Shown here one piece after another: positions 342 to 62,421 of a DNA stretch of 64,000 nt; position 1 is the first letter of the stretch, and each line of letters starts with the position of its first letter. The position numbers were made by a program, and so were the translations under genes. The stretch is from Glycera tridactyla. Its lineage: Eukaryota. The notes under the pieces were generated by a model. It had not been told where the DNA came from, searched no databases, and was given only the letters and a program-made list of their open reading frames with translations. Location: contig OZ286471.1 in the NCBI GenBank assembly GCA_965644265.1, forward strand, positions 49,414,001-49,478,000. The letters are read 5' to 3'.

Positions 342-483
342 GCTCTTCCAGCAGGTGCCAGAGATGAGAATGGAAGACTTACGATACCCCGTGCAGCAAT
401 GGGTGATACCGGGGAGTACCAGTGTACAGCCATTGGTGTTGCAGGAAGCTATTACGCTACTGCAAGACTGACTGTGAGGCCAG
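342..483 (+). CDS. HSPG2: Exon: Ig domain C-terminal half
   Basis: tag|...|gtgagc; [47 protein letters not shown] (D-x-G-x-Y-x-C motif). Confidence 0.85.
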
Positions 484-5618: not shown

Positions 5619-5693
<75 letters not shown>

Positions 5694-13915: not shown

Positions 13916-13992
<77 letters not shown>

Positions 13993-25900: not shown

Positions 25901-28900
25901 CCATGAGCAAGTTAAATGCTGATGTACTCACTGTGATAGGTGTCACATTGGTTGATGTTCGTTAACCATGAGATTTAACTTTGTTCCAAAGCCTATTGTA
26001 TTCAAATCCTTGCCACTACAGTATCCATCATGTAACAGAAGTTTTCAGAACTTATGCCAAGCAGAGATATCGAGTCCTCAGCTGATGCCATGAGCAGGAT
26101 ATTTAAAAAAACAAAACATGCATTAATCGTAAAAATACTAAGATACCTATTGCTTAGGGCAAGTTTCTGCTCAGTAAATCTTTTCATTTGTGTCTGTCCT
26201 AATTTTGCTCTTTTGTTCATGTTATTTCTGACAGAGCTCATTCAGCAAGACAGATGGGACCAGACCAAGTCATGAAGAATTCATGGAGGCATTATCTAAA
26301 CTTGATGCCATCCTGATTCGTGCAACATACCACACCCTCATGGCTGATGCCATGCTGCGAGATGTATCATTGGACACCGCCATAGAGCGTAATACTGGAC
26401 AACCACAGGCCAACATGGTTGAGAAGTGTACCTGCCCTACCGGATATTCAGGTCTCTCTTGTGAGGTATGCACTATGTTGATCTATTTGAAGATATTTGT
26501 ACTAGCCTTTCTGTCAAGACTCTCCTTGGTCATGTGAGAAAAATGTGGGGAGGTGATATACACATGTACTGTAAAACTACCATGGAAATCAATACAGGTA
26601 AGCACTTTGAAGCCATCATGATTTAATCTCTTGAGATAGTTAGTCATGGGTTGCATGTATATTTGCAAAGGTAGGATTGCTAATCAGTAATGTGCAATGT
26701 TGGCTTTCTGATGGTAATCACTTCATAATGTTTGTTTGCCCAGACTCTAATGCATAATCCCAGAAAATGTATGCAATGAGAGACACCTTAAATGTCACCT
26801 AAAAGTGGTCTCAAAAGAGGTGGTCTCTTGTTGGGCGTATATTTGACTATGTTGAACAGAAGAGCTACCCTGCAGAAGCTGTCTCCCATCAAATGTGGTC
26901 TCCCATGGGGGGGTGTCTCTCATAACTGAATTCTCTGAAATTGATCTGAATACTCAAATGATGAAATGAGAGCAACCTTCATTGCCAATACATTTTGTCT
27001 GGAACATCTTTTCGTTTGATCAGCAGTAGTAATAGAATCGATGGTGATATCTACCGATTTCAAGCTGTTGAATCTCTTTCCTTTCCTCAGATCATATTGA
27101 TGTGTGTAGTAATATGAATCGATTTGTTGTAGGAGTGTGCCCCTGGTTACACCCTCAGTTCAAGTGGCACCTGCACACAAGGAGGTAAGTGATGGCCTTA
27201 AATTCTATACATTCAGCTCCCAGTTCTCTATTTTACACTCTATTGCTCACTTTGTATTTGTAAGTGTGTATGCACATGTCTTTGTGTGTTTTTAGAAGTA
27301 ATAATATGGGAGCTCCTGATTCTGCACTTTCTTTTTCAGAAAAAAGGTGGGACAAATCTTCTAGGCCCATGCAAACTCACTTTCCTGATCCAATTACAAC
27401 AATAAGTATAAATATAAGTAAGACCTCTATTTGCACATCGGGAGAAGATTATAGTAATGCCTAAGCATATGCAGATAAGATTTTATCTGTGTGATGCATA
27501 CCACTTTGTTTCAATTAGTGGTTGAATCACATGCTTTTTCTTCTTTCAAGAACTATCGGGTAAAGTAACCTATTCATTTACTTTAAGTATCACAAGTATT
27601 AACATCTGCGGGTTGTGACATCTTTCAGTTAGAATATCTTCATATACTATAGATGAAGCTCTTCTGAATTTCTAACATCTCATAGATATCAAGCATGATG
27701 TTTCAAGCTCGGACATACAGCCTGCTTACAAATTGGAAACTGAAAGCCATCATAGAGATTGGCCTCTCCTTATGGCTATATGCTGTGGAGTGTTTTGATC
27801 AGAGGTTAAATGAGCTCTTTTGATAATCTCGTGTTCATAGACTGAAAACAAGCATTCACATCTCTTTACTATTTAAGACATAAAATGTATCTTGTCGTTG
27901 ATATCTGGACAAAATGTCATGATTGGTAGATCAGAGTGAATGTGATATTTGAATGATAGCTGGTACCGTTGACTCTATTCAGATGGTACTGGCTCACCAT
28001 CCTCTACTGAAATTCCTTCAACAACTGTGGAACTACCAACACCGTGTGCACCTCATGAGTATGAGTGTCAAAATAGTTTATGCATTCCTGCTGAACTTGT
28101 ATGTGACCTCCATGATCACTGTGGTGACAATTCTGATGAGCTAGATTGCGAGGAGCAAGAGGAGGAGGAGGGTGAGCGATCTATTTAAGGATCGCTTTGC
28201 TGTAGGAATTCCCCCAGGATATACATAAATATACATCTGTATTGTCTCCTGTCCTTCCGCTCTTGCCTGTCCCATAACTACCATTCCAATCTCATTAGTA
28301 TGAAGTTGGCATTTATCCTGGCATATAAGTCAACCTGTTGAATAAGTCAACCCCCTGATTTCACCTTGCAAAGTATGGATTCTGCTAAATTCTTGCATTT
28401 AAGATGACCCTGATATTCTTGTAAGATTTGGCATGGCAAGTCATGATCAGCAATAAGATCCATCAAATCCCTTTTGCCTGCATACTCCGATAAAACTTGT
28501 CACGAGTGACCCCCTGACTAGCTACCATCTCTGGCATTTTCCTGTGTCTTGCAGACTAGGGCAATGCCATCAACATTTGTGACATTGGCTTTTCTCAGGG
28601 TTTGATGAAGCTCAGGATGGTGACCTACCCAAGGATGTTTGTGTCTACTAGATAATTTCATGATGTTCTTGGAGAAAATGTCTTGATTCTCTCAAAGATG
28701 ATTATGAACCATTCAAGTGAAATTGATACATTTGTTTGCATTGGCACTATTCATCAATCCTCGTTTGTATTTTGACATTTGGAGGTATATGATGATTGGT
28801 GGATTTCATTGATAGTCAATCTCACATTTATGTCCAGCCTTTCATTTTTGGCTCATATTCTGGTCTGAGATATACAATAAGATAAACCATCTGTATGGTA

Positions 28901-31900
28901 TTCTATTCATTGACAGTTAAAAAAACGTATCCCGGCAGTAATCAAACGTCTTGTCCTAGGTGTTCATGTGCCCTTTGTAGATTGTCATATGACTTATTTA
29001 ATAAGACTTCATGCTTTTTGACATGTACACAAGGAGCTCCTTCCTATTTTCACCTTTCCATGGCCTCATTGCAATGTATCTCAGTTGAAACTCCATTTCA
29101 TGCCAATATTTAAGGTTTGGCCCATGCCTACACCTCATATTAAATCTCAATCCATGATTTATTTTTTCATCTTGCATATTATTACCTCACATAAATTTCC
29201 TCTTGAGTAGATTCCAACTATTGCTTCTCAAATCCAGTATGTTGAACTGCTTTGTTTCTCTCCCTCAACTTATTTTGAATCTTTTCCACCACTGGATGAT
29301 TGCTGATTGTCCATTGTGTGAAGATGTTCTCCAGGTCCTTGTTTTGTATGCATTCAGTGTATTGATATCTCAGGCTCCCTCATGTTTGTTACAAAATCCC
29401 AATCATTTGAGAGACTTAATAATGATGAGACATTTTCAGAATTTGGCTGATGAGTTTTATTGCAGGCATAGCACTGTTAGCTTTGGGAATTTGATGCCAG
29501 GGTCTGAGTGATTTGAATAATTTGGAAGTGAGACATCATTGATAAACTGGCTTACAACAAGAAACAAGCTGTCCTGTAAGAAAAATGTTCCTTGCACAGT
29601 ATTTTTCTGTTATATATGCCTTTCTAGTAAGTTTAATACCAAAAACAGAATAAAGTCTAATGACGTAAGAAGTTCACATATAAGAATTAAGTCTGTTCCT
29701 CCCATGTTCATGGCTGACAAGATTGTTCAGGATATGAAATGGATCCAGAACACTCCATGTATACTCACAAGTTATTGAACCTCCACAGTTTTACTCATGT
29801 ATTGATGACTCACATTGCTTTTTTTCATTCTACTGTTTTTATAGTGAGTAAGCACAGCATCCCATCAAGGATGATTTTATTTGTTCCTTGAATATACTTT
29901 CACCACAACACATGACTGAGAAAAACAGATCTTTCCATTGAAACAATGAATACATATACTTTCCTCTCTGAAAATCCTAGCCAGTTGACTAGAGCTATAT
30001 ATGTAATATAAAATTTGATGCCTGTTTGATTATTCCAATTTCCGACTATGTCAATGGAGTAATTTCTTATATTGGATTTTTTTAAGAGTAATTAGTGGAT
30101 TGCTGTGTCTTCTTTTTCTATATAGTCATTTCATTCACCATTCATTTCATTTGTTGAGACAAAGAATTGCCTCTCTCAAGAATGTGAAAATATCCTCATT
30201 TCATGTATTTACCACCCATATGTCTGATGTTGCCTATATTGAGTTCGATAAATGTTGCCTATCATTTGGTATAATAATTGATTCTGAATGAGGTCATGCT
30301 GTCATTGGGTAATCTTGTTTGTTGTATATCCTTCCCTTTTCTAGGACCAACAGAACCACCAGCACAGTGTCTGTATTACCAGTATCGATGTGATAATGGG
30401 CTCTGTATTGACGCCCGTGTGGTTTGTAATTCATACGATGATTGCGGAGATGGCTCAGATGAAAAACGATGCGGTGAGCATCCTAGTCAAGGCTGCACAC
30501 TTTGCATCCAGAATATAAACTCTATGTCAGCTGGAACTGTGATGAGAAGAAAAGACCACCCTAATTTCTCCAATATGTGACAACTCGTAACAAGTATGAG
30601 TTCATGGTATTATATTTCTCTCCTAAATTGGATTCACTAGCTTGTGTATCCATCCATTTCCGGTTGAACACCAATCCTGCAATTTCAGCTAAATTTTTAC
30701 TACCACTCTACTCACATGGATGCCATTCCTGGAGATGTAGCAATGCTCACGCATCCTATGTAGAATATGGTTTTCTCTGAACCGCAGGCACATGCCGAAA
30801 GCATCTCACAACTGCTTTCACCAACAAGTAGTCCCTAAGTAAAACCAGTGACTTCTGTGAATTGTCGTAATTTGGCTAACTCTCATTTCTTTTGACAGCC
30901 ATGTTGCTCTCCATGACTTTGTATTCAATCTGATCCTAACTTATTTGATGTATCACATTGATGAAAACATGGATAAAAACCAAGATGAGTAATTGGCATC
31001 TATGAGCTGCAAGAATTCTCGATATCTATCTTTGACTGAAGTAGATAATCACGCCGAGTTGAAGTGCCTGCACTAGATCCAGATGTCCCAATTTCACAGC
31101 ACTCAAATTCACTATTCTGGTAGAAATGACTGCCCTGCATTCTCTGCCATTTATCTCCAGTTTGTCAGTCACATTGGGCTAATTAGGTGGGTCTTTGACA
31201 TGATCACAATCTTTGCTGACAGAAGTTAGCTCTAACCTAGTCAAGTTCTCACTACCATTGATTTCTTTCTTTTCCATGATCTCCTTAATCAAGGCTCACA
31301 CTCAGGCATCAACAGATTTCTCTGTATCTATGATGATGATTTTCCATTTGAGATTGTTATATGGTTGCATCTTCCTCTCTGAAGGCTAATGCAGGTGCTG
31401 GAACTGTAACTACACTCACCACATCCTCAATATCTTCATTGGTATTGCTGAACAATAATATTGTCAAATGTCAGAAAGACATTGTATTTTCATGTTGGAG
31501 CATTTTCCTATCTGAATTGGAAGTCAATGGTCGACATGTCGCTCATATTGACTGTTTTTAGCAGTGATCAATGATCTTAAAGAAGAATGGAATTTCCATC
31601 CAAATTCATGTGCTCTCTTTGCTCATGCACCGGCACATCTATTCAGCTGTATGCAACCTACATACTCATGTCAGCTACATGTATGTGGTTTAAATCTTTC
31701 CAACACGATGATCAACATCAGCACTTGTAAAAAGAGGGAGGTGAACTATATATTATCTTGGTAGTGATTTATTCTCACTTATTGACTGATACCCGTCTCT
31801 TATTCTCTTCTGACTGCTCAAGAATTTTTCATTATCTGATTTTTTCATCTGTATTGAAGATTCAAACCGGCATTTCAAATTCATCATCCCTTTTATTCTT

Positions 31901-34900
31901 TCAAGTTTGAATTTCATTCATCTCAACCAAACACATCATCTATATTTCCTGTCACTCACTATTCTACAATCATTTACCTTCAGTTCATATCTCATAGATG
32001 TGTTTCCACTGCTGTTCACTTTTACACACCTTAGATGCTATCTTGATAATTAAGTACTGTTGCACTTTCAATTGAGTTTCTCTAGTATTTTTTGCATCAG
32101 ATCAACATTTGTACCAGTATTGCCTTCTTCGAGATTACTTTCTGTGATGCATGGCCAGGGATTGCATCATCCTGTTTGTTCTGATATTTCACAAGGAATC
32201 ACCAGCTTTGTTCATCCCACAAGATTCCTCACTGAATGCTCATAGTTAAGGATGTTCCTGCTTGGTCATCAGTCATTTTATGGCATTCGGTTACAAGTTC
32301 TTTCATTATGATGTAGAGTGAATGCATTCATATAGCTGATAAGATGCATGGTCACAATTCTCTTTTATGTCATGGTATAAGCTCTCATTTTTCTATTTCT
32401 ATTTTTATATCGTCCTTTGCTAAGATGTCTCAATTTTATCAGCTGCATACTGAAATTCTGTTGTGTACCTGAAAATCACTCTCATTATTCCATATCCAGG
32501 ATACAAGTACACTGATTGCAAATTGAGAGTTGAAGTTATCAACTATTGATTGATTACGGTCGTCAGGATCAGATTGTGCCATCAAAATGAGGATCTTCTG
32601 TTTATTTTCTTTCCTACTTTTGTCAAAGGTGGATTACGTAAGATTAGATATTGGGTGTCTGATCTTCTGATAATGGGTGTGAATGTGAAAGGTATACTCT
32701 AGAATATTCTCAGTTCGAGCCATCTGCGAAATCCAGCAGTTTCATGTGATGTCAGTGCTGTTGAGGATTAATTTGATTTGATTTGAAAAAAATTATTTTA
32801 ATTTGTCACCAAGAATTACCCCTATGACAGAGGCTTTTCTGCTGCAGTTAAGTTCACAAAATTCAATGAACATTTGATCTAGTTACTATCGAAAATCCTC
32901 TCAATCATTGAGTAGATTTGTATGTACTGAGATGAAAATGGCAACTCATTCAGTTAAAGTTGTTCTGTAGTATAAGCTAATATACAGTTTTGCAAAGAGG
33001 GGATTCCATGTTTGTGGACAAGCTGGGACACCAAGTCTGGTAAGCTGGTGCTCCATGTACTTCTTTGGTGGTCCACCCATGTATTCTTATGTCAAATTAC
33101 TGGAATCTGGTGGTTGGGCTGGGTCTGTGCTGTTTGTATATGAGGTCCACACAAAAAGATGTCGCCCACCAAACCACTGCCGAGTATACCTGCCATAGGC
33201 GATTGTGCGACATAGAAAAGGGACTCCTTGGAATATTTAGGTGGCTCTGCATACAAAATCTGGTGGAGCATAAAGTTGGAACCTTTGGATTTGAAGTATA
33301 TCATTGAACCTATCAGCAAGATGATTTGAAGTGATCTGTTTATCCATTTCAATACATGATCCACTATTGTCTCCTTCATTACCACAGATGAAACATCAGG
33401 TACCAAATCACCGAGAACTGAACCACCCCTCACTGCACCATCAACTGAACTCCCTGACATTGGACCAACCCCAACTCTGTGTGGGGAGGCCATGTTTCGG
33501 TGTGGTAATGGGGTGTGCATTGACATACAGTATGTATGCGATGACTATGATGACTGCGGTGATTTGAGCGATGAAAACGATTGCGATACTGAAGATGGTG
33601 AGCGATCGCAGTGCTGTCGATCACTTAAGATTATGCATTTACATCCCTTTCATCAGGATATGACTTGATGCTAACTATCATTGCTGTTATATATTATCTG
33701 ATGAGAGAGATGTGGATGAAGTGTAGAGTAAGGCCAAACAAAATATCCAACCACATGTATCCCATTGAGTTAGTTAATGCAAGTGCCAATGATGCTCGGT
33801 GGTGGGTTGGACAGGAAACTGACCCATCATGTGTCCATCATTGATGACTTTGCAGAATGTGTAGCAGAGAGAATGTTCATCAAATTCCATTATGATATAG
33901 TGTACCCTGTAACAAGCAAGTACCTCAAATTGATGTGAATTAGGTACCTTGAGACCCAAATCCCCAAAATACCAACCATTATGATTCTGGAGTAATGATC
34001 ACTCTTTGTAGGCTGAAATTTTGCCATTTTACGCACATTACCTCAAGAAATTCCTTCTCTTATTTGATCATTGCAAATACTGCTTTAATTACTCCTAAAA
34101 ATTGGCATCATTACTCTTTCTGCTCATCAATGGTTGGCATCTCTGAAATCCCCGTACTCCAGTTCCCACAAATTTGTCCTGCTAAAATAGTGTTAATGTA
34201 TATTGCAATACATATATACATTATCAGATGCTGATACTATCAGAATCTTAACCATCCCTACCCTCATTGAAATCCTTCTGGTACAATCAATCAATATACT
34301 GTAAGTCACTTGGACGTACAGTTTGATACATAGGAGAATAGGTGAATATGTAGAGAAAGGCTGGTGAGAATTCCAAATCCCAATCAGTAAAACACCTGAC
34401 TGGAGTCAAAGAGGTGGGCAACATCAGAAGTATTCTTTGGCTCATCATTGTATGTTGAGGTACAATACTGAGTCTTCAGATGTCCTCAAGGCAATGCACA
34501 TTGTGGGAGACTGAATATTTCGATAGTCAAGTGTGAGACACCTTCATTCATTTTCCATCAGTCCTTGCTTATGCTGATATCAACATTCTTCATCCTGTCC
34601 TCACCATTCATGATTTGATCGATATCATGAGTGAATCAGTATGACAGATTATATCCCCGTTATTCATAACATGATCAATATGGATGAATATATTACGTAT
34701 TGTCAGTCCTGTCAGTCAATTCTACATCATCGATTGGTTGAAGGTGGTCAACTTGTGGCTGATAATTCATTTCAGCCGATTTTTTTTCAGATGTTTCCAT
34801 ATCATTTGAGTGCTGATTTTCGTCCCAGCTTTCTCTGTTGTATACATTGAAAGCCAGATTCGAGTATTCCCTTATTCAAGGCCGTCATAATCATGACAGA

Positions 34901-52900: not shown

Positions 52901-53229
52901 TGTGGAAAATCCATTTGTGGGATTATATTCCCAACGTCATCGCAATATAGTGATACAAAATCACATCACTGATACAAGTGCACTCTACAAATACCTGTCT
53001 ATCCTATTTATCACTTGTTATACTCCTGCCCAAACAAAGTTTGGAAGGGGGTTCAGAAAAAAAGAGGTTTTTGGATCTGTGTGTTTGGTTGTATGTAACT
53101 TTGTAATTCTTTGAGACGTCCAAAATGGACAACAATCGGTAAGGTGTAAGGACTCTCACACCCCCTTGGCTTTCTTTCAATGTTATGTGAGATTCTTTGG
53201 TAATAGACAATGCCTTCCCATTGCACACA

Positions 53230-53266
<37 letters not shown>

Positions 53267-56200: not shown

Positions 56201-59200
56201 CTGATATCCCTTTACTTTGAGATTTCATATGGCATGGTGATTCATCATAAGATTCATATAAACCACATGAAATACCAATTATTTCTATGATACGTCAGCA
56301 CTTCAGAGCTTTAGATTTTCTGAGAGTTGGGTGGACCCATGTGGCCCATGAACTGGAAATACGGGTCATAACTAAAGATTGATGAGCCAACCATTGTTAA
56401 TCATTGGTTAATGGAGACAAAATTGCTGGGCCAGTGGACCCATAGTAGGAGATATTGATGGGTTGAAAGGGCAAAAACGTGCTGACCAACAATCTGAAGC
56501 TCTTCTCATTTATTAAGATGCAAGACACTTTTTTGGCCTATACAGCTCAATCCCATATTTGCTTCATCTCAGATGGCACTCCAACAGAACCAACAACAGA
56601 AAAACCACACATTCACACTTGTGCAAGTGACGAGTTCACCTGCAGCAATGGACGGTGTGTGAATGAACAGCACAGGTGTGACTCGTTTGATGATTGTGGA
56701 GACAATTCTGATGAGCAAGGGTGTGGTAAGCAATCTTATGCTTAACATCAATCGAATAATTGCCCAGCAATTAAGGATCCCTCTCCTGCATGCTGTGTGA
56801 GCATATGGAATAGAATAAGAAAAAGCCACATTCACATTCATGATCTTGGACTTGAACTTGAATAACTTCTTGAATCTGACATTAGTACTTATGGAGAAGT
56901 TTCAGAATCCTTCCTGGCTCCTGAAGCATAGATGATATTTTTTAGTGGAACATTACTGCAGAGACTTACTCAAACCTGCCATGCTGATCGGAGATATACA
57001 ATGTTTTACAGAAAGTCAAAAGATATGCAGAAAGTAATATGATGCGATCTCCTGCAGTAGACCATTGATGTTCAAGCTGAGAGCCTTTTGTCTACTGGCG
57101 AATTCTATCGTTGCTGTCTGTCTTGACTCAACCATCTGATTGAATGCCTAAAGGCATCCATTGTCCAACCATCAAATTGTTTAAGTGAGACCTCTATCAT
57201 GTAATATGCCCAACAGCATTCAGCCATGGCCATATGCATTTGGTAGTGCAATCATCAAGATTTTTGAGAATTACTTCAGAATTGATGGTTTGCTCTGGAA
57301 TGAACATGGAAGAATCAATCTATCCTATAAAAGCAAAAAGTTTGATAAGCCATTGGATTTTGTGACATTGGAAATTGAAGTATTCTTTTGAGCCACAGTA
57401 TTCTGTTATACCTCAACTCTTCAAATGTGTCTGAAATTTCCATTACAGAGTGGAGATACTTTTATTGCTTTCTTAGATAAGAATTTATGTGTGATACTAG
57501 CATGCCTTACAGACATTAATTTTGCTGGATGAAGGAGATATGATATGTTAATTGATCCATTACATTCACTTGCATGGTTATTTACATTGGTACACCTATC
57601 TCTGGTAAAGGTAATACCATTATCCCATCTATGTACGATGGAGTGATGGACCATAATATAAGCCAAGAAATATTGGATTTCTTATATGGATCCTTAATAG
57701 TTAAGCACACATTGAAGTTAGAACACATATTATATTTAAGACACAGATCTGCCACCAACTTCACTGCTAAATCTTATCTATAGTTACTTGTGTGTGACCA
57801 GTAGGATATTCTAGGATGATTATTGTATACCAATTGTTTGCTGGACACTTTGTACTTGTCAGGGCATGCCAAGTCTAAGTATGGAAGTCACCTATTTCAT
57901 CCTGCCACAGATACTTTCTGTACTGATTTTTTTGACATCTGTGTTGACGAGGATACTGTGCAAGTTCAATGCAGCACCACCATTCATAGTTGCATGTTTT
58001 CAATTGAGCTCCTATCAAGTCGGTTCACATCATATCTACAGGCTCGAATAGTTGGTTTGTGATCACAGTGATGTATTCATGAACAATATATTTGTGAAAC
58101 ATTGTGTAGTGTCATATAGGTTGAATTTCTGTGAGATAGGAATCGGTGACATGCATTTCCTTCTTTCTTACTAGTAGGTGAGCCTACAACGTCAGTGCAT
58201 CCAAGTAGCCACTGTCCTTTCTACCAGTTTCGGTGTAACAGTGGCGTATGTGTAGATGAGCATCTAAGATGTAACAATCATATAGACTGCCCGGATGGTT
58301 CAGATGAAAAAGATTGTGGTGAGCTGGATGTTTTCAGCATCCCTCTGCCAAATGCTGCTCAATTCATGCATGATGTTGCATGTTCAAGCTATCTCACTGC
58401 TTGACAGCATATCTTTCCAAATGACTAAATCATCACAGTCTTGTTGTGTTATCAGTGCAGCTGAACCTCCAGTCCATGTCCCCCTGCCCTTCTAATTTGG
58501 ATATGATACTAGTTAGAGGTTCGATGTTGATAATATGATGGAATCTCTGTTTATCAAATTTACAAAGACAAGACCAGTTAAACATAATCCATCAATTCTA
58601 TTGCAAAATCAACGGACAATATGGCATGCACCAGCTCTAATTAGCTGAATAAGGCTGTATGTTGGCTAAAATATATAGGAACCATCAGGACCCATGGTGT
58701 ATATTTTTGGTAGCAAGTGCCAAATGTTGGTAGCCTATAAGAAATTGTCAATTACAGCTCTCATAATTTATGGGGCCACTGGCTACTAAAGTAGCAATTT
58801 AGAGCCCCGCTGAATGCAGATCATCTCCCCCATATTTTGCATATGGTTTCTTTTGAAGAATACCAGTGATGTACGAATGTTCCTGCAGACCTATTCGGTT
58901 TCTTGATCACTGATCCCACTACCTGAATCGATCACGTACCCGTGCTATGTATCTGAATGTTCAGATTCTCATTGTCAGCATCTCACCGATCTGCGTCAAC
59001 CTGACTGCCATCTCATCGTTACCCTCCCATCTCAAAGCTGCTGTCAGAATTTTGCCAGATTTTTTTGCTTCTAGCAATAAGTCAAGCCAAGCAATTCAAG
59101 TTATATATGTCATGGCGTGGTTGGATGAGGTCGTCAGTGATGATACATAGAATGGTTGCTTTCATGTGAACTTATTCACTTTGTGTTCAATCTAAGTAGG

Positions 59201-61501
59201 TTTTCTGTATGATTGACTTTTTGAGTGTGAATGAATGTGATTTGAGAGAGACAGATGAGTGTGTGTGTGTACGCATGTGTGTGCCTGCATGCGAGCATCC
59301 ATGCGTGTGTTGTGTATGATGGATATGATGAGTATTTTGAGATGCCAATTGTTTTCCATGGTATTCCATTGCTGAAGTTTAACACAGAGTCAAACATGCT
59401 CATGAGACCACCTCTCTAAGAAGAGCAACCTGAGCCGGAATGTGATGATGTTTGCAACAGTAAATTACCTCTCCATAAAAGCCACTTGCCTACAATGACT
59501 GCTTTTTATGCAACTGAAAGTGGCCTTTATGGACAGGTTTGACTGTAATGCCAAACTTAGGTATTTAAGCTTAACCTGACAGTACAGGATCCTTCTTGAC
59601 ATAGGAATTGAAACATTGTCATGGTGTTCAGTGATTTATCTACAAATCAAACAGATATAATGAGTCCCACAATAAAATCAATGAGTCCCGGTGTTACGCA
59701 AACAAAATCCTGACATTGACAGGTATGTCTGTATGCTTTAGTTACAGATGTACTGAGGTAGTAGTTATTGACAGAATGCAGTGACAGTTTTAAGGCCAAT
59801 CATAACAGAGAAAATTATATTGAGAACTAGGCCTGTGATGTGGGGGGATATTTGGCAGCTGGTGTAGTGGTCAGATTCGGATGCATCCACTATCAAAATA
59901 AACGCTTCCAGTGGGATGCAGGTGCTATGAGAGCAATGAGTCCAGGCAGGCTGAGATGAGTCTGAGACTCGGGATGCAGGTGTAGATAAATCACTGCGGT
60001 GTTACTATATAGCAAGAAACCATGGGTTGTTGGCCTGACAAGTTATACACCATTAGTTATGGTGTATAAGTGGGATAATCAATAGAAACATAACAGGTAG
60101 AGTATAACTGTTATGTCAATACCTCATGTTTCTCGCCTGTATACCATGAATTTTCATCTAAATAATGATGAAATTGCTGGGAAAAGGACAATCGTGCATA
60201 TCGTCCATGCCACATCACCAGGGGCCATCTCACTGGTTTTCATTTTTCAGGATGATCTACACTCACATATCACTGTATGTGAATGACATTTCCATGCTTG
60301 TTTTTCATGCAAATGATTCAGGCTGAGTCATGTCAAGAGAAGATGATATATCTTAATTTTTCATCTCATTTAAGCATCTATATTAGAGTCCTAAGAAAGA
60401 TAAACCTGACAAAAGCAGTGAAATTATGTGACTTTTTTGCATATTGGGAGTTGTCCGTCAGGCATGTAAATGAAATGCCACCAGTGACAACGCGGAGAGA
60501 ACTGGGATAGTCACGCTATTCTACATGCGATTCACGCTCCCCCTCTGAATATTCATGGGAATAGTGGCATCTGCCTCCTGACTGCTCAAATACAGGAGGA
60601 AGTGAGAGCTGGGTGGCGCCAAGATTGACGTCGGTAGTAGAAAAGACAAGGGCGAGTCTTGTGACTGTGCATTATGATGTAGACATGTGCTAATGGTCAC
60701 TTATATTCCACACCCGTATATTCAAGGCATACTAGCACTGATTGTGGTTTATTAGTTTATTTGGATCATTGTTTGGTGGAATCTTTTCATCAAAGTGATC
60801 ATGAGATTGTGATATGGAATTGAATTGATATTCTGTTGCAGCGTAGCAGAAATGCTTTCCCCATAATTTTTTCACACATCATGGAGGTGTTTGGCGAATG
60901 TTTTCTCGGTCTGTTGAACTGAACACCCTGCTGGTCTCAAATGACCCATCATATCTCAAGGTGCCATGAAGATATTTGTGGATGACCAGGGGTGTTAGGG
61001 GTCCGCATGATGATGGACAGTTGTAGAAGTGCCTGCCAGCACGGATTTAATGCCATCCTCATAAGTGAGCATGTGAAACACCAGAATTCATACAAATGTC
61101 AGACAAAGTTTACCTCATTTATCAGCTACCAAAATAGTCTTTGTAACCTTTGCAAAGGAAAAATTGATGTTTCTCGATGAAATGTTGAAATCAAGGACGA
61201 TGCATGAATGCCCTTTTTGCCAGTTTTAATACTCTTCATGGGTACATATTGACTGTGTACGAGGTGAGATATGAGATGAGATCAGATGATTATGTCTATT
61301 GAGGTGTAGTCTCATTTGATGACCTGTCAGTTTGTGCTTCATTTGCAGTAACTGAAACCCCTGGCGGAGTGACAGATGCACCATCACATGCGACATGTCA
61401 GAGTGATGAGTTCACTTGTGATAATGGCATATGCATAGATAAGTCACTTTACTGTGATGGCAAGGTACATTGTGGGGATGGTTCTGATGAGCGAGACTGT
61501 G
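342..61501 (+). CDS. HSPG2: Perlecan / basement-membrane heparan sulfate proteoglycan core protein, partial multi-exon gene (5' and 3' ends outside window)
   Basis: Manually spliced domain order Ig-LDLa x3-Ig-(LE/L4) x3, the perlecan domain II-III architecture. It is followed in compatible phase by an LDLa cassette array. Membership of the array in the same gene is inferred from phase continuity; no terminal exon was recognised in between. Confidence 0.88.
967..1101 (+). CDS. HSPG2: Exon: LDLa (domain II)
   Basis: cag|...|gtgagt, 135 nt; [44 protein letters not shown]. Confidence 0.92.
1533..1652 (+). CDS. HSPG2: Exon: LDLa (domain II)
   Basis: 120 nt; [39 protein letters not shown]. Confidence 0.93.
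2196..2327 (+). CDS. HSPG2: Exon: LDLa (domain II)
   Basis: 132 nt; [43 protein letters not shown]. Confidence 0.93.
2765..2929 (+). CDS. HSPG2: Exon: Ig domain N-terminal half
   Basis: 165 nt; [54 protein letters not shown]. Confidence 0.93.
3661..3783 (+). CDS. HSPG2: Exon: Ig domain C-terminal half
   Basis: 123 nt; [40 protein letters not shown]. Confidence 0.92.
4174..4298 (+). CDS. HSPG2: Exon: laminin-EGF first part (domain III-1)
   Basis: [41 protein letters not shown]. Confidence 0.9.
4907..5086 (+). CDS. HSPG2: Exon: laminin IV (L4-1)
   Basis: 180 nt; [16 protein letters not shown]...[14 protein letters not shown]. Confidence 0.88.
5153..5525 (+). mobile_element. Helentron/DINE-like non-autonomous element
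   Basis: TTTTTAT-polyC...GGGGGGCATACTGG followed by a (CTGTCCGT) microsatellite and a short 3' palindrome, a layout typical of HINE/DINE-1 elements; boundaries approximate. Confidence 0.5.
5621..5691. repeat. (TG)n microsatellite
   Basis: Direct read. Confidence 0.97.
5838..5924 (+). CDS. HSPG2: Exon: L4-1
   Basis: 87 nt; [29 protein letters not shown]. Confidence 0.88.
6002..6495. mobile_element. Tc1/mariner-type MITE family A, copy 1 (494 bp)
   Basis: TA TSD, about 30-bp imperfect TIR CAGTCG..CGCC..TTTTT.TGTGGCA; homologous to 37543-38036. Confidence 0.82.
6881..6964 (+). CDS. HSPG2: Exon: L4-1
   Basis: 84 nt; [28 protein letters not shown]. Confidence 0.86.
7666..7802 (+). CDS. HSPG2: Exon: L4-1 (contains RGD)
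   Basis: 137 nt; [45 protein letters not shown]. Confidence 0.9.
8213..8251. repeat. (ACCA)n microsatellite
   Basis: Direct read. Confidence 0.93.
8422..8533 (+). CDS. HSPG2: Exon: L4-1 end / LE
   Basis: 112 nt; [37 protein letters not shown]. Confidence 0.92.
9157..9270 (+). CDS. HSPG2: Exon: laminin-EGF
   Basis: 114 nt; [38 protein letters not shown]. Confidence 0.93.
9733..9875. mobile_element. 143-bp foldback MITE
   Basis: Perfect 19-bp IR ATTGGGCCCATTCGACTGG/CCAGTCGAATGGGCCCAAT plus internal 13-bp IR CTTCACGAAAAAT/ATTTTTCGTGAAG; superfamily unclear. Confidence 0.75.
9994..10121 (+). CDS. HSPG2: Exon: laminin-EGF
   Basis: 128 nt; [42 protein letters not shown]. Confidence 0.93.
10930..11069. 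mobile_element. MITE family B-like copy
   Basis: TA|CAGTGAACCTGTC ... GGTGGTCTC ... GCAGATTCGACTT|TA (degenerate). Confidence 0.6.
11125..11270 (+). CDS. HSPG2: Exon: laminin-EGF
   Basis: 146 nt; [48 protein letters not shown]. Confidence 0.93.
12390..12481 (+). CDS. HSPG2: Exon: laminin-EGF
   Basis: 92 nt; [30 protein letters not shown]. Confidence 0.9.
13275..13415 (+). CDS. HSPG2: Exon: laminin-EGF
   Basis: 141 nt; [47 protein letters not shown]. Confidence 0.92.
13562..13731. mobile_element. MITE family B-like copy
   Basis: TA|CAGTGAAACCTG ... AGATTTCATTG|TA. Confidence 0.62.
13918..13990. repeat. (GT)n microsatellite
   Basis: Direct read. Confidence 0.97.
14068..14247 (+). CDS. HSPG2: Exon: L4-2
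   Basis: 180 nt; [15 protein letters not shown]...[15 protein letters not shown]. Confidence 0.92.
15095..15187 (+). CDS. HSPG2: Exon: L4-2
   Basis: 93 nt; [31 protein letters not shown]. Confidence 0.92.
15655..15738 (+). CDS. HSPG2: Exon: L4-2
   Basis: 84 nt; [28 protein letters not shown]. Confidence 0.88.
16195..16313 (+). CDS. HSPG2: Exon: L4-2
   Basis: 119 nt; [39 protein letters not shown]. Confidence 0.93.
17059..17170 (+). CDS. HSPG2: Exon: L4-2 end / LE
   Basis: 112 nt; [37 protein letters not shown]. Confidence 0.93.
17548..17724. mobile_element. Short MITE family B (CAGT.AAACCTGT TIR, TA TSD)
   Basis: TA|CAGTAAAACCTGTCTATAGTG ... CACTATAGCAGGTTTTACTG|TA. Confidence 0.8.
17879..17992 (+). 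CDS. HSPG2: Exon: laminin-EGF
   Basis: 114 nt; [38 protein letters not shown]. Confidence 0.94.
18602..18729 (+). CDS. HSPG2: Exon: laminin-EGF
   Basis: 128 nt; [42 protein letters not shown]. Confidence 0.93.
19247..19333 (+). CDS. HSPG2: Exon: laminin-EGF
   Basis: 87 nt; [28 protein letters not shown]. Confidence 0.92.
19769..19857 (+). CDS. HSPG2: Exon: laminin-EGF plus linker
   Basis: 89 nt; [29 protein letters not shown], donor gtcagt. Confidence 0.88.
20221..20396. mobile_element. MITE family B-like copy; 3' part tandemly duplicated
   Basis: TA|CAGTCAAACCTGTC ... GACAGGTTTCACT. Confidence 0.7.
20311..20617. repeat. Two-copy 154-bp tandem duplication
   Basis: ATGTCAATAGAGAAGAGCCG...GATGTACATCTCAATTT.ATGGTCATG repeated from 20311 and 20465. 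Confidence 0.88.
20720..20805 (+). CDS. HSPG2: Exon: laminin-EGF
   Basis: 86 nt; [28 protein letters not shown]. Confidence 0.9.
21098..21213 (-). repeat. Dispersed repeat, inverted relative to the copy near 36909-37005
   Basis: Shared GTCAAGATTC.TTCAA.CTTGGCTGGGC..CCAGGTCTCC.TCCTTC core; boundaries approximate. Confidence 0.65.
21463..21603 (+). CDS. HSPG2: Exon: laminin-EGF
   Basis: 141 nt; [47 protein letters not shown]. Confidence 0.93.
22225..22410 (+). CDS. HSPG2: Exon: L4-3
   Basis: 186 nt; [15 protein letters not shown]...[13 protein letters not shown]. Confidence 0.9.
22429..24342. mobile_element. Non-autonomous piggyBac-like element, 1914 bp
   Basis: TTAA TSD (22425-22428, 24343-24346); perfect 14-bp TIR CCCTTTACTGCATA; subterminal GTGCATGAAA repeats at both ends; no transposase ORF. 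Confidence 0.85.
24771..24866 (+). CDS. HSPG2: Exon: L4-3
   Basis: 96 nt; [32 protein letters not shown]. Confidence 0.92.
25385..25468 (+). CDS. HSPG2: Exon: L4-3
   Basis: 84 nt; [28 protein letters not shown] (same size and phase as paralogous exons in repeats 1 and 2). Confidence 0.82.
26235..26465 (+). CDS. HSPG2: Exon: L4-3 end / LE
   Basis: 231 nt; [32 protein letters not shown]...[16 protein letters not shown]. Confidence 0.93.
27133..27184 (+). CDS. HSPG2: Exon: short LE-closing exon, ends in phase 1
   Basis: tag|...|gtaagt, 52 nt; [17 protein letters not shown]. Confidence 0.85.
27983..28171 (+). CDS. HSPG2: Array cassette A1: T/P linker + LDLa + acidic tail
   Basis: 189 nt, phase 1-1; [62 protein letters not shown]. 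Confidence 0.87.
28172..28196 (+). promoter_or_regulatory. Putative 5' splice-site stem-loop of A1
   Basis: gtg AGCGATC tatttaag GATCGCT. Confidence 0.5.
30345..30473 (+). CDS. HSPG2: Array cassette A2: LDLa
   Basis: 129 nt; [42 protein letters not shown]. Confidence 0.87.
30474..30500 (+). promoter_or_regulatory. Putative 5' splice-site stem-loop of A2
   Basis: GTG a GCA t CCT agtca AGG c TGC a CAC. Confidence 0.5.
33388..33597 (+). CDS. HSPG2: Array cassette A3: long linker + LDLa
   Basis: 210 nt; [69 protein letters not shown]. Confidence 0.87.
34959..35099 (+). CDS. HSPG2: Array cassette A4: LDLa
   Basis: 141 nt; [46 protein letters not shown]. Confidence 0.88.
36524..36649 (+). CDS. 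HSPG2: Array cassette A5: LDLa
   Basis: 126 nt; [41 protein letters not shown]. Confidence 0.88.
36909..37005 (+). repeat. Dispersed repeat, partner of 21098-21213
   Basis: Same core in the opposite orientation. Confidence 0.65.
37543..38036. mobile_element. MITE family A, copy 2 (494 bp)
   Basis: Same TIRs, TA flanks and internal sequence (TTGTTTATTGCCGTGAC...GTCAGAAC.GTCACGTA) as 6002-6495. Confidence 0.8.
39784..39918 (+). CDS. HSPG2: Array cassette A6: LDLa (AAG acceptor)
   Basis: 135 nt; [44 protein letters not shown]; 5' boundary less certain. Confidence 0.82.
42168..42287 (+). CDS. HSPG2: Array cassette A7: LDLa
   Basis: 120 nt; [39 protein letters not shown]. Confidence 0.87.
42768..43193. 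repeat. Minisatellite, about 62-bp unit, about 7 copies
   Basis: Unit TGAGCTGT.C.AGTGCATCAAGTGAAGG.ATATTGGTGGTGCAGATAGTCATTTGTCCACTG. Confidence 0.9.
43198..43286 (+). pseudogene. Dead LDLa cassette (pseudo-exon) cut by a TTAA element
   Basis: ctag|tg ttt aca tgt...: [28 protein letters not shown]. Aligns to CxYYExxC..C..D..DC with Cys3 replaced by Ser (agt); stop TAA lies in the TTAA insertion site; possible remnant (EYVDC) after 45603. Confidence 0.68.
43910..45471 (+). mobile_element. 5'-truncated non-LTR retrotransposon (CR1/L2-like LINE)
   Basis: Stop-free RT frame ([10 protein letters not shown]...[19 protein letters not shown]...LFADDT...KYLGIILD), a 3' UTR with AATAAA and an (AAATC)n tail; ATCTCTT at both junctions. 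Confidence 0.9.
43926..44978 (+). CDS. LINE reverse transcriptase, C-terminal fragment
   Basis: 350-aa ORF with RT motifs PQG and FADD; the ATG is internal to a truncated frame. Confidence 0.88.
   Translation: MSRYGANANCVKWFTSYLKDRMCTVKVNGVTSGERGIACGVPQGSILGPLLFSIYVNDFTHYMRGPSVNLFADDTAILVSDRTPERLQGKLENALSIASKWLNRNKLSLNIKKTQVMVFGSRQQVRRCKLNVTLNDVNINQTKTFKYLGIILDETLSFADHAEYIRAKTAGRVSVLGRLRGVLSKETSLMLYRTLILPVFDYCDIVYDSLGMVAASKLQKVQNKAFRIVTKSERYTRTSQIHSELHMPFLDCRRQYHTLIHVNKILNGSLPVQYTPLCTYIEPIHSYSTRLNEKPYVNAVRPMLRIAEGSFAYRGGKLWNEYVSQPDGFESTVPKLFKEKLKSFIHFSNM
46673..46819 (+). CDS. HSPG2: Array cassette A8: LDLa (core type)
   Basis: 147 nt; [48 protein letters not shown]. Confidence 0.89.
46820..46850 (+). 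promoter_or_regulatory. Putative 5' splice-site stem-loop of A8
   Basis: g TGAG CAAC ACT agtta AGT t GTTG gt CTCA. Confidence 0.55.
47589..47720 (+). CDS. HSPG2: Array cassette A9: LDLa
   Basis: 132 nt; [43 protein letters not shown]. Confidence 0.89.
48321..48467 (+). CDS. HSPG2: Array cassette A10: LDLa
   Basis: 147 nt; [48 protein letters not shown]. Confidence 0.89.
49289..49435 (+). CDS. HSPG2: Array cassette A11: LDLa
   Basis: 147 nt; [48 protein letters not shown]. Confidence 0.89.
50762..50908 (+). CDS. HSPG2: Array cassette A12: LDLa
   Basis: 147 nt; [48 protein letters not shown]. Confidence 0.89.
51044..51177. other. Assembly gap (N) inside the array
   Basis: Run of N. Confidence 0.99.
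51684..51830 (+). CDS. HSPG2: Array cassette A13: LDLa
   Basis: 147 nt; [48 protein letters not shown]. Confidence 0.89.
52688..52852 (+). CDS. HSPG2: Array cassette A14: LDLa
   Basis: 165 nt; [54 protein letters not shown]. Confidence 0.89.
53224..53263. repeat. (CA)n microsatellite
   Basis: Direct read. Confidence 0.93.
53856..53999 (+). CDS. HSPG2: Array cassette A15: LDLa
   Basis: 144 nt; [47 protein letters not shown]. Confidence 0.89.
54079..54316. other. Assembly gap (N) inside the array
   Basis: Run of N. Confidence 0.99.
54513..54644 (+). CDS. HSPG2: Array cassette A16: LDLa
   Basis: 132 nt; [43 protein letters not shown]. Confidence 0.89.
55516..55653 (+). CDS. HSPG2: Array cassette A17: LDLa
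   Basis: 138 nt; [45 protein letters not shown]. Confidence 0.88.
56573..56725 (+). CDS. HSPG2: Array cassette A18: LDLa
   Basis: 153 nt; [50 protein letters not shown]. Confidence 0.88.
58175..58318 (+). CDS. HSPG2: Array cassette A19: LDLa (TAGTAG tandem acceptor; alternative start 58178)
   Basis: 144/141 nt; [47 protein letters not shown]. Confidence 0.87.
59387..59545. mobile_element. MITE family B-like copy
   Basis: Degenerate GAGTCAAACATG ... GACAGGTTTGACTG|TA. Confidence 0.6.
61349..61501 (+). CDS. HSPG2: Array cassette A20: LDLa
   Basis: 153 nt; [50 protein letters not shown]. Confidence 0.88.
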
Positions 61502-61525
61502 GTAAGCGATCTTAGTTAAGATCGC
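61502..61525 (+). promoter_or_regulatory. Putative 5' splice-site stem-loop of A20
   Basis: gtaaGCGATCTT agtt AAGATCGC: perfect 8-bp stem containing TAGTTAAG. Function is inferred. Confidence 0.6.
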
Positions 61526-62300
61526 ACCCAACATGATTCCACAACCTAGTTAAGAATAAATGATTCCTAGATAAGATTCTTCAGGGATCATCAGTGAACA
61601 GATGAATGATAGTATAATTTCTCTGTCTTAGTATTTCCCCATCTGACTGATGGTATCATGACCCTACCACTTGATTATATTCTGTATTCATTCCTCTCAT
61701 ACACCCATTCATCAGTAATTTATTTAATCAAAATCTTATATGTGAATACTATAGCTCAGAGAAAATTTGCTCTCACCTTAACTCTATAAGAATTATAGCT
61801 CATGGGGCACAATATATATCCTTCCCACCCAGCTTTCATATCTAGATCAATGTAAGTTCTTGGATCTGGACACGATGTTTACTCAAAATGTAGTGTTATT
61901 TCTCTTCTGTGATATTACAATCATTATCTTAGTCACAGTATCTAAGATGGTCAATCTCTATCATACATTGAGATTGATACATGAGAAAAATGTATTCTGG
62001 TATCATGCCCAGTCCAGTCACATGGAGCCTCGAAGCCTGCCCAGAGACATGAGAAATGAATCACATGAAAAATGAAAAATGTTGGAATACATTGACCCTG
62101 TAATATTTGGTATTCTCATCAGAATCAAGACATGTTGTTCATCATAGATGCCATCAGTGGCCTGCTTGTATCCCTGTTTTGAAGGGAATTCTTCCTGTGT
62201 GATTCAATAATAACATTCTTCAGTGGCTATAAGCAACCCCACTAAAATTACCTCAGCATTGATGAGGATTCACTTCATGAATAATTGAAATTTCACACAG

Positions 62301-62421
62301 GGATTCCTGAAACTGATGTGCCACCGGTGGATACAGATAAACCACCTATTGTCACCAATGTTCCTCCCACCATCACTCATGAACCATCACTCCGGTGTGG
62401 GCCGTTGGAGTTCCAGTGTCA
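62301..62421 (+). pseudogene. Array cassette A21, 5' part only, interrupted after LDLa Cys2
   Basis: cag|gg att cct...: IPETDVPPVDTDKPPIVTNVPPTITHEPSLRCGPLEFQC, then foreign sequence starting TGTAAC; in-frame stop at 62438-62440. Confidence 0.72.

What the first reader, a model, noticed from the sequence alone, without database searches (positions are those of the whole stretch)
27983..62421. 35-kb array of 20 intact plus 2 disrupted symmetric LDLa cassette exons placed after perlecan domain III
Seen: each exon encodes a T/P-rich linker and one LDLa, is phase 1-1, and is 120-210 nt with a length divisible by 3, so any subset can be skipped in frame. Established: vertebrate perlecan and C. elegans UNC-52 have few LDLa modules, in domain II before the L4/LE region, and the expanded LDLa set of Drosophila Trol is also N-terminal to domain III. 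Domain III is normally followed by Ig repeats. Inference: this is a lineage-specific insert that could generate combinatorial, length-variable perlecan isoforms. I do not recall it being described, but I could not search.
Basis: partly seen in the sequence, partly recalled or inferred. Interest (0 to 1): 0.88.

Follow-up and report, generated by a model that had tools for sequence, protein, structure and literature searches.

The report
Extra LDLa exon array in perlecan
A probably annelid perlecan gene carries 20 one-module LDLa exons straight after its laminin-like domain III; the array is real and under selection, but it is an unusual placement of a design already seen in related perlecan genes, not a new kind of system.

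Summary
On the + strand, 27983-61501 carries 20 intact exons. Each encodes a T/P/S-rich linker plus one LDLa module (Pfam PF00057, 20 of 20). Each has AG/GT sites, phase 1-1 and a length of 120-210 nt divisible by 3. There are also two broken copies (43203-43283 and 62301-62421). Both N gaps lie in introns.

Upstream lies the canonical Ig-LDLa x3-Ig-L4 x3 part of a perlecan orthologue that groups with annelids. Its last exon (27133-27184) ends in phase 1, as does the last domain III exon of the oyster gene. Splicing it through all 20 exons gives 998 codons without a stop. Paralogous modules show dN/dS of about 0.07.

The placement is unusual: none of 36 mollusc and annelid perlecans has LDLa after the last L4. 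The design is not new. In the oyster gene every LDLa is one phase 1-1 exon, and RefSeq isoforms of Pomacea, Haliotis, Magallana and a spider differ by whole LDLa modules. Secondary LDLa arrays also exist elsewhere: seven modules inside domain IV in the nemertean Lineus, and modules inside or after domain III in three arthropod models.

No RNA run was listed, so joining to domain III and exon skipping remain inferred. The scan had already noted the homogenised core and the fossil cassette on this same window.

The parts
342..551 (+). Second half of the Ig module that precedes the three domain II LDLa modules (open frame; exon lies within it)
   Evidence: Pfam I-set. Colinear with Owenia residues 907-957 and Ridgeia residues 1915-1958.
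967..2327 (+). Three canonical domain II LDLa exons (967-1101, 1533-1652, 2196-2327), each phase 1-1
   Evidence: Motif scan and splice sites. They are one-to-one orthologues of the last three LDLa modules of annelid and mollusc perlecans, at 77-89% identity.
2746..3824 (+). Ig module of domain II, in two exons that lie within the open frames 2746-2934 and 3630-3824
   Evidence: Pfam I-set/Ig_3. Colinear tblastn matches.
4161..26465 (+). Domain III: three laminin B (L4) modules interleaved with laminin EGF exons. The last exon of this stretch ends '...[13 protein letters not shown]' in phase 0.
   Evidence: Colinear with Owenia residues 1184-2234. Pfam Laminin_B and EGF_laminin. ORF listing.
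27133..27184 (+). Last domain III exon, '[17 protein letters not shown]', phase 0 in and phase 1 out. It completes the LE module that hosts L4-3 and is the presumed donor for the array.
   Evidence: Sequence read. Oyster exon 59 ends '...GGSCTQG' in phase 1 before the first Ig exon. Orthologue comparison.
27983..42287 (+). Array exons A01-A07 (27983-28171, 30345-30473, 33388-33597, 34959-35099, 36524-36649, 39784-39918, 42168-42287): diverged modules separated by long introns
43203..43283 (+). Decayed LDLa pseudo-exon ('CAYYEWQC...CDSYSSC' followed by a stop). A 62-nt minisatellite lies upstream (42750-43190) and a truncated reverse-transcriptase ORF lies downstream (43926-44975).
   Evidence: Profile hit with E 1e-5 over positions 10-36 only. 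Translation. Repeats. Pfam RVT_1.
46673..54644 (+). Core exons A08-A16 (46673-46819, 47589-47720, 48321-48467, 49289-49435, 50762-50908, 51684-51830, 52688-52852, 53856-53999, 54513-54644): near-identical modules separated by 0.5-1.3 kb introns that share no similarity
   Evidence: Alignment. Self-blastn similarity is limited to the exons plus about 20-40 nt of flank. For seven of these modules (A08, A10-A15): dN 0.034, dS 0.49, ratio 0.07.
55516..61501 (+). Array exons A17-A20 (55516-55653, 56573-56725, 58178-58318 with an alternative acceptor at 58175, 61349-61501)
62301..62421 (+). Partial 21st unit: phase-1 acceptor, 33-aa P/T/V linker and the first two Cys of an LDLa ('CGPLEFQCH'), then GTAACG and a stop five codons later. 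It is either truncated or a split module whose second half lies beyond the window.
   Evidence: No Pfam hit.

Best explanation
The window holds the middle of a perlecan (HSPG2/Trol/UNC-52) orthologue of a probable annelid. After the canonical Ig-LDLa x3-Ig-L4 x3 block, the phase-1 intron that in relatives separates domain III from the Ig repeats is occupied by a tandem array of at least 20 LDLa exons.

Origin (inferred): LDLa exons of perlecan are symmetric phase 1-1 units. A copy of such exons could therefore land in any phase-1 intron of the gene without breaking the frame. Here they did so after domain III. They were then amplified locally (the core A08-A16) and turned over by birth and death (pseudo-exon with a LINE fragment at 43-45 kb).

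Product (inferred from sequence): if all exons are included, 981 residues are added. They form 20 calcium-binding, acidic LDLa beads joined by short T/P/S linkers that are likely O-glycosylated, lying between the laminin-like domain and whatever follows.

Selection (shown): the modules are kept under strong purifying selection.

Splicing (inferred by homology, not shown): some of the exons are skipped as cassettes, as annotated for the N-terminal LDLa arrays of mollusc and spider perlecans. That would tune the number of beads.
For: - 20 intact modules with consensus splice sites and uniform phase 1-1.
- Uninterrupted 998-codon conceptual splice from exon 27133-27184.
- That exon ends 'CTQG' in phase 1, as oyster exon 59 does before the first Ig exon.
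- No N between domain III and the array.
- The 798-nt interval holds no start exon. The only ATG-led ORF there has a phase-2 donor (my reading).
- The upstream part is colinear with annelid perlecans, and the domain II LDLa modules are one-to-one orthologues.
- The tree places the window with Owenia, Ridgeia and ENA213, with support 90/89.
- Array modules best match N-terminal array modules of Ridgeia and Owenia, at 57-68% identity.
- dN/dS is 0.07 with dS 0.49. A08 and A10 are identical over the 36 codons compared, despite 6 synonymous differences.
- Introns between units share no similarity.
- The oyster gene has every LDLa as one phase 1-1 exon of 105-150 nt.
- RefSeq isoforms of four species differ by whole LDLa modules, singly and in blocks.
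Against: - No transcript data: no RNA run was listed, and no near-identical protein or fragment of this species is in the protein collection. The splice from 27184 to 27983, the inclusion of each exon and the downstream partner are all unobserved.
- None of 36 lophotrochozoan perlecans has LDLa at this place, so a rearrangement or a second gene copy must be considered.
- Domain III here lacks the two LE modules that all compared orthologues have before domain IV, which could mark a breakpoint.
- The window ends 1.6 kb after a truncated unit, so continuation into Ig exons is not shown.
- RefSeq isoforms are model predictions, not proof of regulated splicing.
Confidence: 0.7

Rival explanations
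1. Partial tandem duplication or a second gene. The array would be the ordinary N-terminal LDLa array of a downstream perlecan copy. The upstream Ig-LDLa x3-Ig-L4 x3 block would be a truncated first copy, either fused in frame to the second copy or ending at 27.2 kb as a separate, shortened gene.
For: - The canonical position of such arrays is before Ig-LDLa x3-Ig-L4 x3 in all 36 relatives.
- Array modules resemble N-terminal modules of annelid perlecans.
- Domain III stops early, without its last two LE modules.
- If the donor at 27184 is not used, the frame stops two codons later (GGT AAG TGA).
Against: - No signal-peptide, SEA or other first exon lies between 27184 and 27983.
- The first array exon has a phase-1 acceptor, so it needs an upstream phase-1 donor, and the nearest one is 27184.
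- The upstream block shows no frameshift or stop across about 25 exons and is 50-80% identical to orthologues, which argues against a decaying copy.
- If the two copies are fused in frame, the array still lies after a domain III within one transcript.
Confidence: 0.17
2. Assembly artefact. A contig-level misjoin or scaffolding error placed the gene's N-terminal LDLa array after domain III.
For: The placement is unique among the relatives compared. There are three N gaps in the window, two of them inside the array.
Against: - The junction region 26465-28171 and the first 12 array exons lie in one gap-free stretch, 197-51043.
- Strand and splice phase are coherent across the junction.
- No repeat shared between the junction interval and other parts of the window was found.
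Confidence: 0.05
3. The exons belong to perlecan, as in the best explanation, but all of them are always included. The array would then be a fixed 981-residue spacer with no isoform diversity.
For: - Near-identical modules kept under strong purifying selection fit a structure whose length matters.
- Splice sites are consensus-like in all 20 exons.
- In relatives only some LDLa exons differ between annotated isoforms.
Against: Whole-module differences between isoforms are annotated in all four species examined. A conserved intronic element just after most donors hints at regulation.
Confidence: 0.3

Closest known systems
N-terminal LDLa arrays of protostome perlecan/Trol (e.g. Magallana gigas XP_034337830.2, Pomacea canaliculata XP_025082601.1, Haliotis XP_048238836.1, Ridgeia piscesae, Owenia fusiformis)
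   Same: - One LDLa per exon, phase 1-1, 105-150 nt in the oyster gene.
- 10-42 modules with short linkers.
- Module sequences 57-68% identical to those of the window.
- Annotated isoforms differ by whole modules.
   Different: These arrays lie before the Ig-LDLa x3-Ig-L4 x3 block; the window's array lies after it. The window's linkers are longer and richer in T/P. Its introns carry a GTRAGC-N5-TAGTTAAG element that is absent from the oyster gene.
Lineus longissimus (nemertean) perlecan-like isoform X7, 5592 aa (P0334)
   Same: A spiralian perlecan with a second array of near-identical LDLa modules (7) downstream of domain III, in addition to the N-terminal array.
   Different: That array lies in the middle of the Ig repeats of domain IV, after about 8 Ig modules, and has almost no linkers. 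It is a gene-model prediction, and the protein is only about 50% identical to the window in domains II-III.
Arthropod perlecan/Trol models with LDLa inside or after domain III: XP_047486482.1 (6021 aa, 10 LDLa between L4-1 and L4-2), Rhipicephalus microplus Trol isoform X25 XP_075744885.1 (2 LDLa at the same place), Ladona fulva KAG8224763.1 (1 LDLa after L4-3)
   Same: LDLa modules sit directly after an LE module ending '...GY.GNP..PG..C', at the homologue of a phase-1 intron of the oyster gene. The dragonfly module sits after the third L4 block, as here.
   Different: They are from another phylum and have fewer modules. Two of the three sit after the first L4 block, not the third. Their exon structure was not examined here.
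C. elegans unc-52 alternative Ig cassette exons (regulated by MEC-8, SMU-1/2, HRP-2, CCAR-1; reviewed in PMC6266596)
   Same: An experimentally established case in which perlecan isoforms arise by regulated splicing of unc-52. That the alternative exons are symmetric module-encoding Ig exons is from my own knowledge; the review text read names the regulators only.
   Different: The modules are Ig modules of domain IV, few in number, and not LDLa. Regulation there is shown by genetics; here nothing is shown.

Membership tests
Perlecan / HSPG2 / Trol / UNC-52 orthologue | Domain II: LDLa modules followed by an Ig module immediately before domain III | tested here: met
   Three LDLa exons at 967-2327 are one-to-one orthologues of the last three LDLa modules of annelid and mollusc perlecans, at 77-89% identity. 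Ig exons lie at 2746-3824.
Perlecan / HSPG2 / Trol / UNC-52 orthologue | Domain III: three laminin B (L4) modules interleaved with laminin EGF modules | tested here: met
   Colinear with Owenia residues 1184-2234. Pfam Laminin_B and EGF_laminin. However, the two LE modules after L4-3 are absent.
Perlecan / HSPG2 / Trol / UNC-52 orthologue | Domain IV Ig repeats and domain V LamG/EGF at the C-terminus | not testable with these tools
   No Ig or LamG exon occurs after 27184 in the window.
Perlecan / HSPG2 / Trol / UNC-52 orthologue | Groups with perlecans of related phyla in a tree of domains II-III | tested here: met
   In an IQ-TREE analysis of 31 rows, the window falls inside the lophotrochozoan perlecans with the annelid rows. 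Support is 90/89 and 91/93, and the end branch is long at 0.76.
LDL-receptor class A module (PF00057) | Six conserved Cys and the acidic calcium cage (D..D.D.SDE) | tested here: met
   20 of 20 exons hit PF00057, best E 1.6e-12. Six Cys, two Asp and the Glu are invariant, and four further positions of the motif are conserved in at least 90% of modules.
Protostome perlecan LDLa cassette array | One module per exon with symmetric phase 1-1 | tested here: met
   Window. Oyster reference gene.
Protostome perlecan LDLa cassette array | Position N-terminal to the Ig-LDLa x3-Ig-L4 x3 block | tested here: not met
   The array starts 798 nt after the last domain III exon. None of the 36 relatives has LDLa after the last L4.
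Protostome perlecan LDLa cassette array | Individual modules skipped in some transcripts | not testable with these tools
   No RNA run was listed. In relatives, annotated isoforms differ by whole modules.
Dscam-type arrays controlled by docking and selector RNA pairing | A conserved intronic element in each unit that is complementary to a single docking site | tested here: not met
   A conserved element exists (TAGTTAAG after 8 donors exactly, variants in others), but its reverse complement does not occur anywhere on the + strand of the window. The exons are also not of equal length, as alternatives would be.

The most novel reading that the evidence does not exclude
The array could be a regulated combinatorial cassette system specific to this lineage. 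In that reading, the conserved element just after the donor (GTRAGC-N5-TAGTTAAG, in places folded into a hairpin that covers the 5' splice site) sets the inclusion of each LDLa exon. One perlecan gene would then yield a graded series of proteins with 0 to 20 extra calcium-binding beads between domain III and the Ig rod.
Probability: 0.1. Interest if true: 0.6.

Novelty: new variant of a known kind. Interest (0 to 1): 0.35.

Why it matters
Perlecan is a core basement-membrane proteoglycan whose domain order is treated as fixed from placozoans to mammals.

This window, taken with gene models from a nemertean and several arthropods, suggests that symmetric LDLa exons have entered different phase-1 introns of the gene more than once. 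That makes perlecan a clear natural example of exon shuffling by phase-compatible modules.

For the biology of this animal, up to 20 extra LDLa beads would lengthen the protein and add many calcium-dependent, acidic binding sites. If the exons are skipped in various combinations, the tissue could tune both properties.

None of this changes what is known about how such arrays work. The value is comparative rather than mechanistic.

Tried and rejected
In hindsight an exon-dense stretch or kind 'any' might have done better.
- Same-species proteins or fragments: searching the L4 exon among proteins of similar length gave only two hits at 58-59% identity. The best identity in the representative library was 64%. 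The fragments that end after 'SCE' run into introns and say nothing about the junction.
- Owenia and Ridgeia gene structures: not on record or too long. The oyster isoform X5 was not on record either; the longest isoform worked.
- My first reading of exon 27133-27184 as a truncated LE at a rearrangement breakpoint: weakened once the oyster gene showed that domain III normally ends '...CTQG' in phase 1. The exon holds exactly the five Cys that complete the LE hosting L4-3.
- Start exon between 27184 and 27983: the only ATG-led ORF (27686-27820) has a phase-2 donor and no signal-peptide character (my reading).
- Gene conversion as the cause of the near-identical core: dS of about 0.5 and unrelated introns fit old duplicates under purifying selection better. 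Conversion limited to exons is not excluded.
- 5' splice-site hairpins as a general feature: strong in about five exons only. The mean z is -0.8 with p about 0.06, so this is not established.
- Transposon at 62.4-64 kb as the cause of the truncated last unit: no internal repeat and no Pfam hit, so this is left open.


Full report
**The observation**

The window is 64 kb at 39% G+C, with three N runs: 69-196, 51044-51177 and 54079-54316. A six-frame scan for the LDLa core motif finds 23 modules, all on the + strand. Three lie at 1.0-2.3 kb and 20 lie between 28.1 and 61.5 kb.

Each of the 20 sits in a short open frame. Each is bounded by an AG acceptor with a pyrimidine tract and two leading bases, and by a GTGAG or GTAAG donor with one trailing base. 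That is phase 1 on both sides.

The exon lengths are 189, 129, 210, 141, 126, 135, 120, 147, 132, 147, 147, 147, 147, 165, 144, 132, 138, 153, 141 and 153 nt. All 20 translations hit Pfam PF00057. The alignment shows six invariant Cys and the acidic calcium cage.

A profile built from them finds only two further pieces. One is a decayed copy at 43203-43283 that ends in a stop. The other is a half module at 62366-62422.

Both N gaps inside the finding fall in introns: between exons 12 and 13, and between exons 15 and 16. The exons on either side have their own splice sites and symmetric phase. The frame therefore does not depend on the gaps, though a hidden exon cannot be excluded. I did not try to fill them.

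**What lies upstream**

Positions 342-26465 carry, in order: the end of an Ig module, three LDLa exons, an Ig module in two exons, and three laminin B (L4) modules interleaved with laminin EGF exons.

A search of 1.84 billion representative proteins with the last L4 exon returns perlecans. A word-index search names them as basement-membrane heparan sulfate proteoglycan core proteins of molluscs, annelids and others.

The window is colinear with Owenia residues 907-2234 and with the matching part of Ridgeia. The three LDLa modules at the start are one-to-one orthologues of the last three LDLa of those proteins, at 77-89% identity.

In a tree of domains II-III the window falls among lophotrochozoan perlecans. 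It sits beside Owenia, Ridgeia and an unnamed ENA transcript, with support 90/89 and a long end branch. The animal is probably an annelid. No protein of the species itself is in the collections.

**The junction**

The L4-3 exon ends '...[13 protein letters not shown]' in phase 0 at 26465. The next exon, 27133-27184, reads '[17 protein letters not shown]' and ends with one extra base before GTAAGT. The first array exon begins 798 nt later with two bases that complete that codon.

I mapped all 91 exons of the Magallana gigas perlecan gene from its locus. There the last domain III exon ends '...GGSCTQG' in phase 1, and the first Ig exon of domain IV follows in phase 1-1.

So the window's array occupies the intron that normally separates domain III from domain IV, or its equivalent. 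Splicing 27133-27184 to all 20 exons gives 998 codons without a stop.

One difference remains. All eight orthologues compared have about 125 residues (two LE modules) between 'SCE' and the end of domain III, and the window has none. The 17-residue exon, together with the end of the L4-3 exon, supplies exactly the five Cys that complete the LE module hosting L4-3. The boundary is therefore structurally clean. It may still mark an old deletion or breakpoint.

**Is the array functional?**

Self-comparison shows that the units share similarity only over the exons and 20-40 nt of flank. The introns are unrelated.

Among the seven most similar modules, mean dN is 0.034 and mean dS is 0.49, a ratio of 0.07. 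A08 and A10 are identical over the 36 codons compared, despite six synonymous differences. These are old duplicates held by purifying selection on the protein.

Birth and death is visible as well. The pseudo-exon at 43.2 kb sits next to a 62-nt minisatellite and a truncated reverse-transcriptase ORF.

**How unusual is it?**

I mapped LDLa, L4 and Ig positions on 36 mollusc and annelid perlecans. Nearly all read as an N-terminal LDLa array of 10-42 modules, then Ig, three LDLa, Ig, three L4, then Ig repeats; a few models lack the Ig between the array and the last three LDLa. None has an LDLa after the last L4. The window's placement is therefore not the norm of the clade as far as it is sampled; only three annelid sequences were available.

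The design, however, is ordinary for perlecan:
- In the oyster gene every LDLa is one phase 1-1 exon of 105-150 nt.
- RefSeq isoforms of Pomacea, Haliotis, Magallana and a spider differ from one another by whole LDLa modules of 37-42 residues, singly and in blocks.
- The window's array modules are most like N-terminal array modules of Ridgeia and Owenia, at 57-68% identity, without one-to-one partners.

Secondary LDLa arrays elsewhere in the protein also exist:
- The nemertean Lineus longissimus isoform X7 has seven near-identical LDLa in the middle of domain IV.
- A 6021-residue arthropod model has ten between L4-1 and L4-2.
- A tick Trol isoform has two at the same place.
- A dragonfly model has one after L4-3.

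The arthropod modules between L4-1 and L4-2 sit directly after an LE module ending '...GY.GNP..PG..C'. In the oyster gene that position is a phase-1 intron.

My reading is that phase-compatible LDLa exons have entered different phase-1 introns of perlecan several times. This window is the largest case found directly after domain III.

The perlecan evolution paper I read (PMC4398486) and a review (PMC6266596) do not describe such arrays. The review does cover regulated splicing of unc-52.

**Explanations**

The best explanation is one perlecan gene with a lineage-specific LDLa array between domain III and what follows. It would add up to 981 residues of calcium-binding beads on T/P/S linkers (54% T+P+S). 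Some exons are probably skipped, as in relatives. I put this at 0.7 for gene membership. For skipping given membership I put it lower, at about 0.6-0.7.

The main rival is a partial tandem duplication or a second copy whose N-terminal array this is (0.17). Arguing for it are the canonical position of such arrays, the missing LE modules and the stop two codons past the donor. Arguing against it are the absence of any start exon in 798 nt, the need of the first array exon for a phase-1 donor, and the intact state of the upstream block.

A misjoin is unlikely (0.05), because 197-51043 is free of N and coherent in strand and phase.

Constitutive inclusion of all exons remains quite possible (0.3 given membership).

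**What I could not do**

No read evidence exists in this report. The flanking windows could not be seen. What follows the array, and whether an N-terminal array also exists, are unknown.

**Verdict**

The feature is real and functional, and its placement is unusual. It belongs to a known kind: symmetric LDLa cassette exons of protostome perlecan. Both points are weakened by public gene models. Interest is 0.35, and the class is a new variant of a known kind.

Noticed in passing
window, first 45 nt of the introns after array exons (e.g. 46820-46840, 49436-49456, 61502-61525): A conserved element GTRAGC-N5-TAGTTAAG follows the donor. T[TC]AAG occurs within +45 in 14 of 20 array introns, 11 of them at +14/+15, against about 9% expected by chance per exon. 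It occurs in 0 of 19 LDLa introns of the oyster perlecan gene and in 0 of 4 other donors of the window. In 9 exons the first in-frame stop of a retained intron falls at intron nt 12; in most of these it is the TAG of the motif. It may be a splicing regulatory element or just a conserved duplication flank.
   Followed up: partly
window 28172-28200, 61502-61530, 56726-56750, 46820-46850: In some units (A01, A20, A18, A08, A03) the intron start folds into a hairpin that begins at +3 to +5 and so covers the 5' splice site. The stem sequences differ between units (GCGATC/GATCGC, CAACA/TGTTG). Over all 20 units the signal is weak: mean z -0.8, p about 0.06, although MFE is lower than for oyster donors (p 0.001).
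   Followed up: partly
window 26465-27184: Domain III lacks the two laminin EGF modules (about 125 residues) that all eight compared perlecans have between the L4-3 block and domain IV. A single 52-nt exon closes the LE that hosts L4-3.
   Followed up: partly
P0334 (Lineus longissimus perlecan-like isoform X7), residues 3658-3917: Seven near-identical LDLa modules with almost no linkers sit in the middle of the Ig repeats of domain IV. This is a second LDLa array in another spiralian perlecan model.
   Followed up: partly
window 42750-43190 and 43926-44975: A 62-nt minisatellite of about 7 copies directly abuts the LDLa pseudo-exon. A truncated reverse-transcriptase ORF (Pfam RVT_1, E 7.5e-19) lies 650 nt downstream in the same 4.4-kb intron.
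   Followed up: partly
window 58172-58180: Tandem NAGNAG acceptor (TAGTAG) at exon A19. Both sites keep the frame and differ by one residue.
   Followed up: no
window 5997-6480 and 37538-38020: A 485-nt interspersed repeat at 74% identity is shared by a domain III intron and an array intron.
   Followed up: no
window 5640-5700 and 13900-13990: Long (CA)n/(GT)n microsatellites lie in domain III introns.
   Followed up: no
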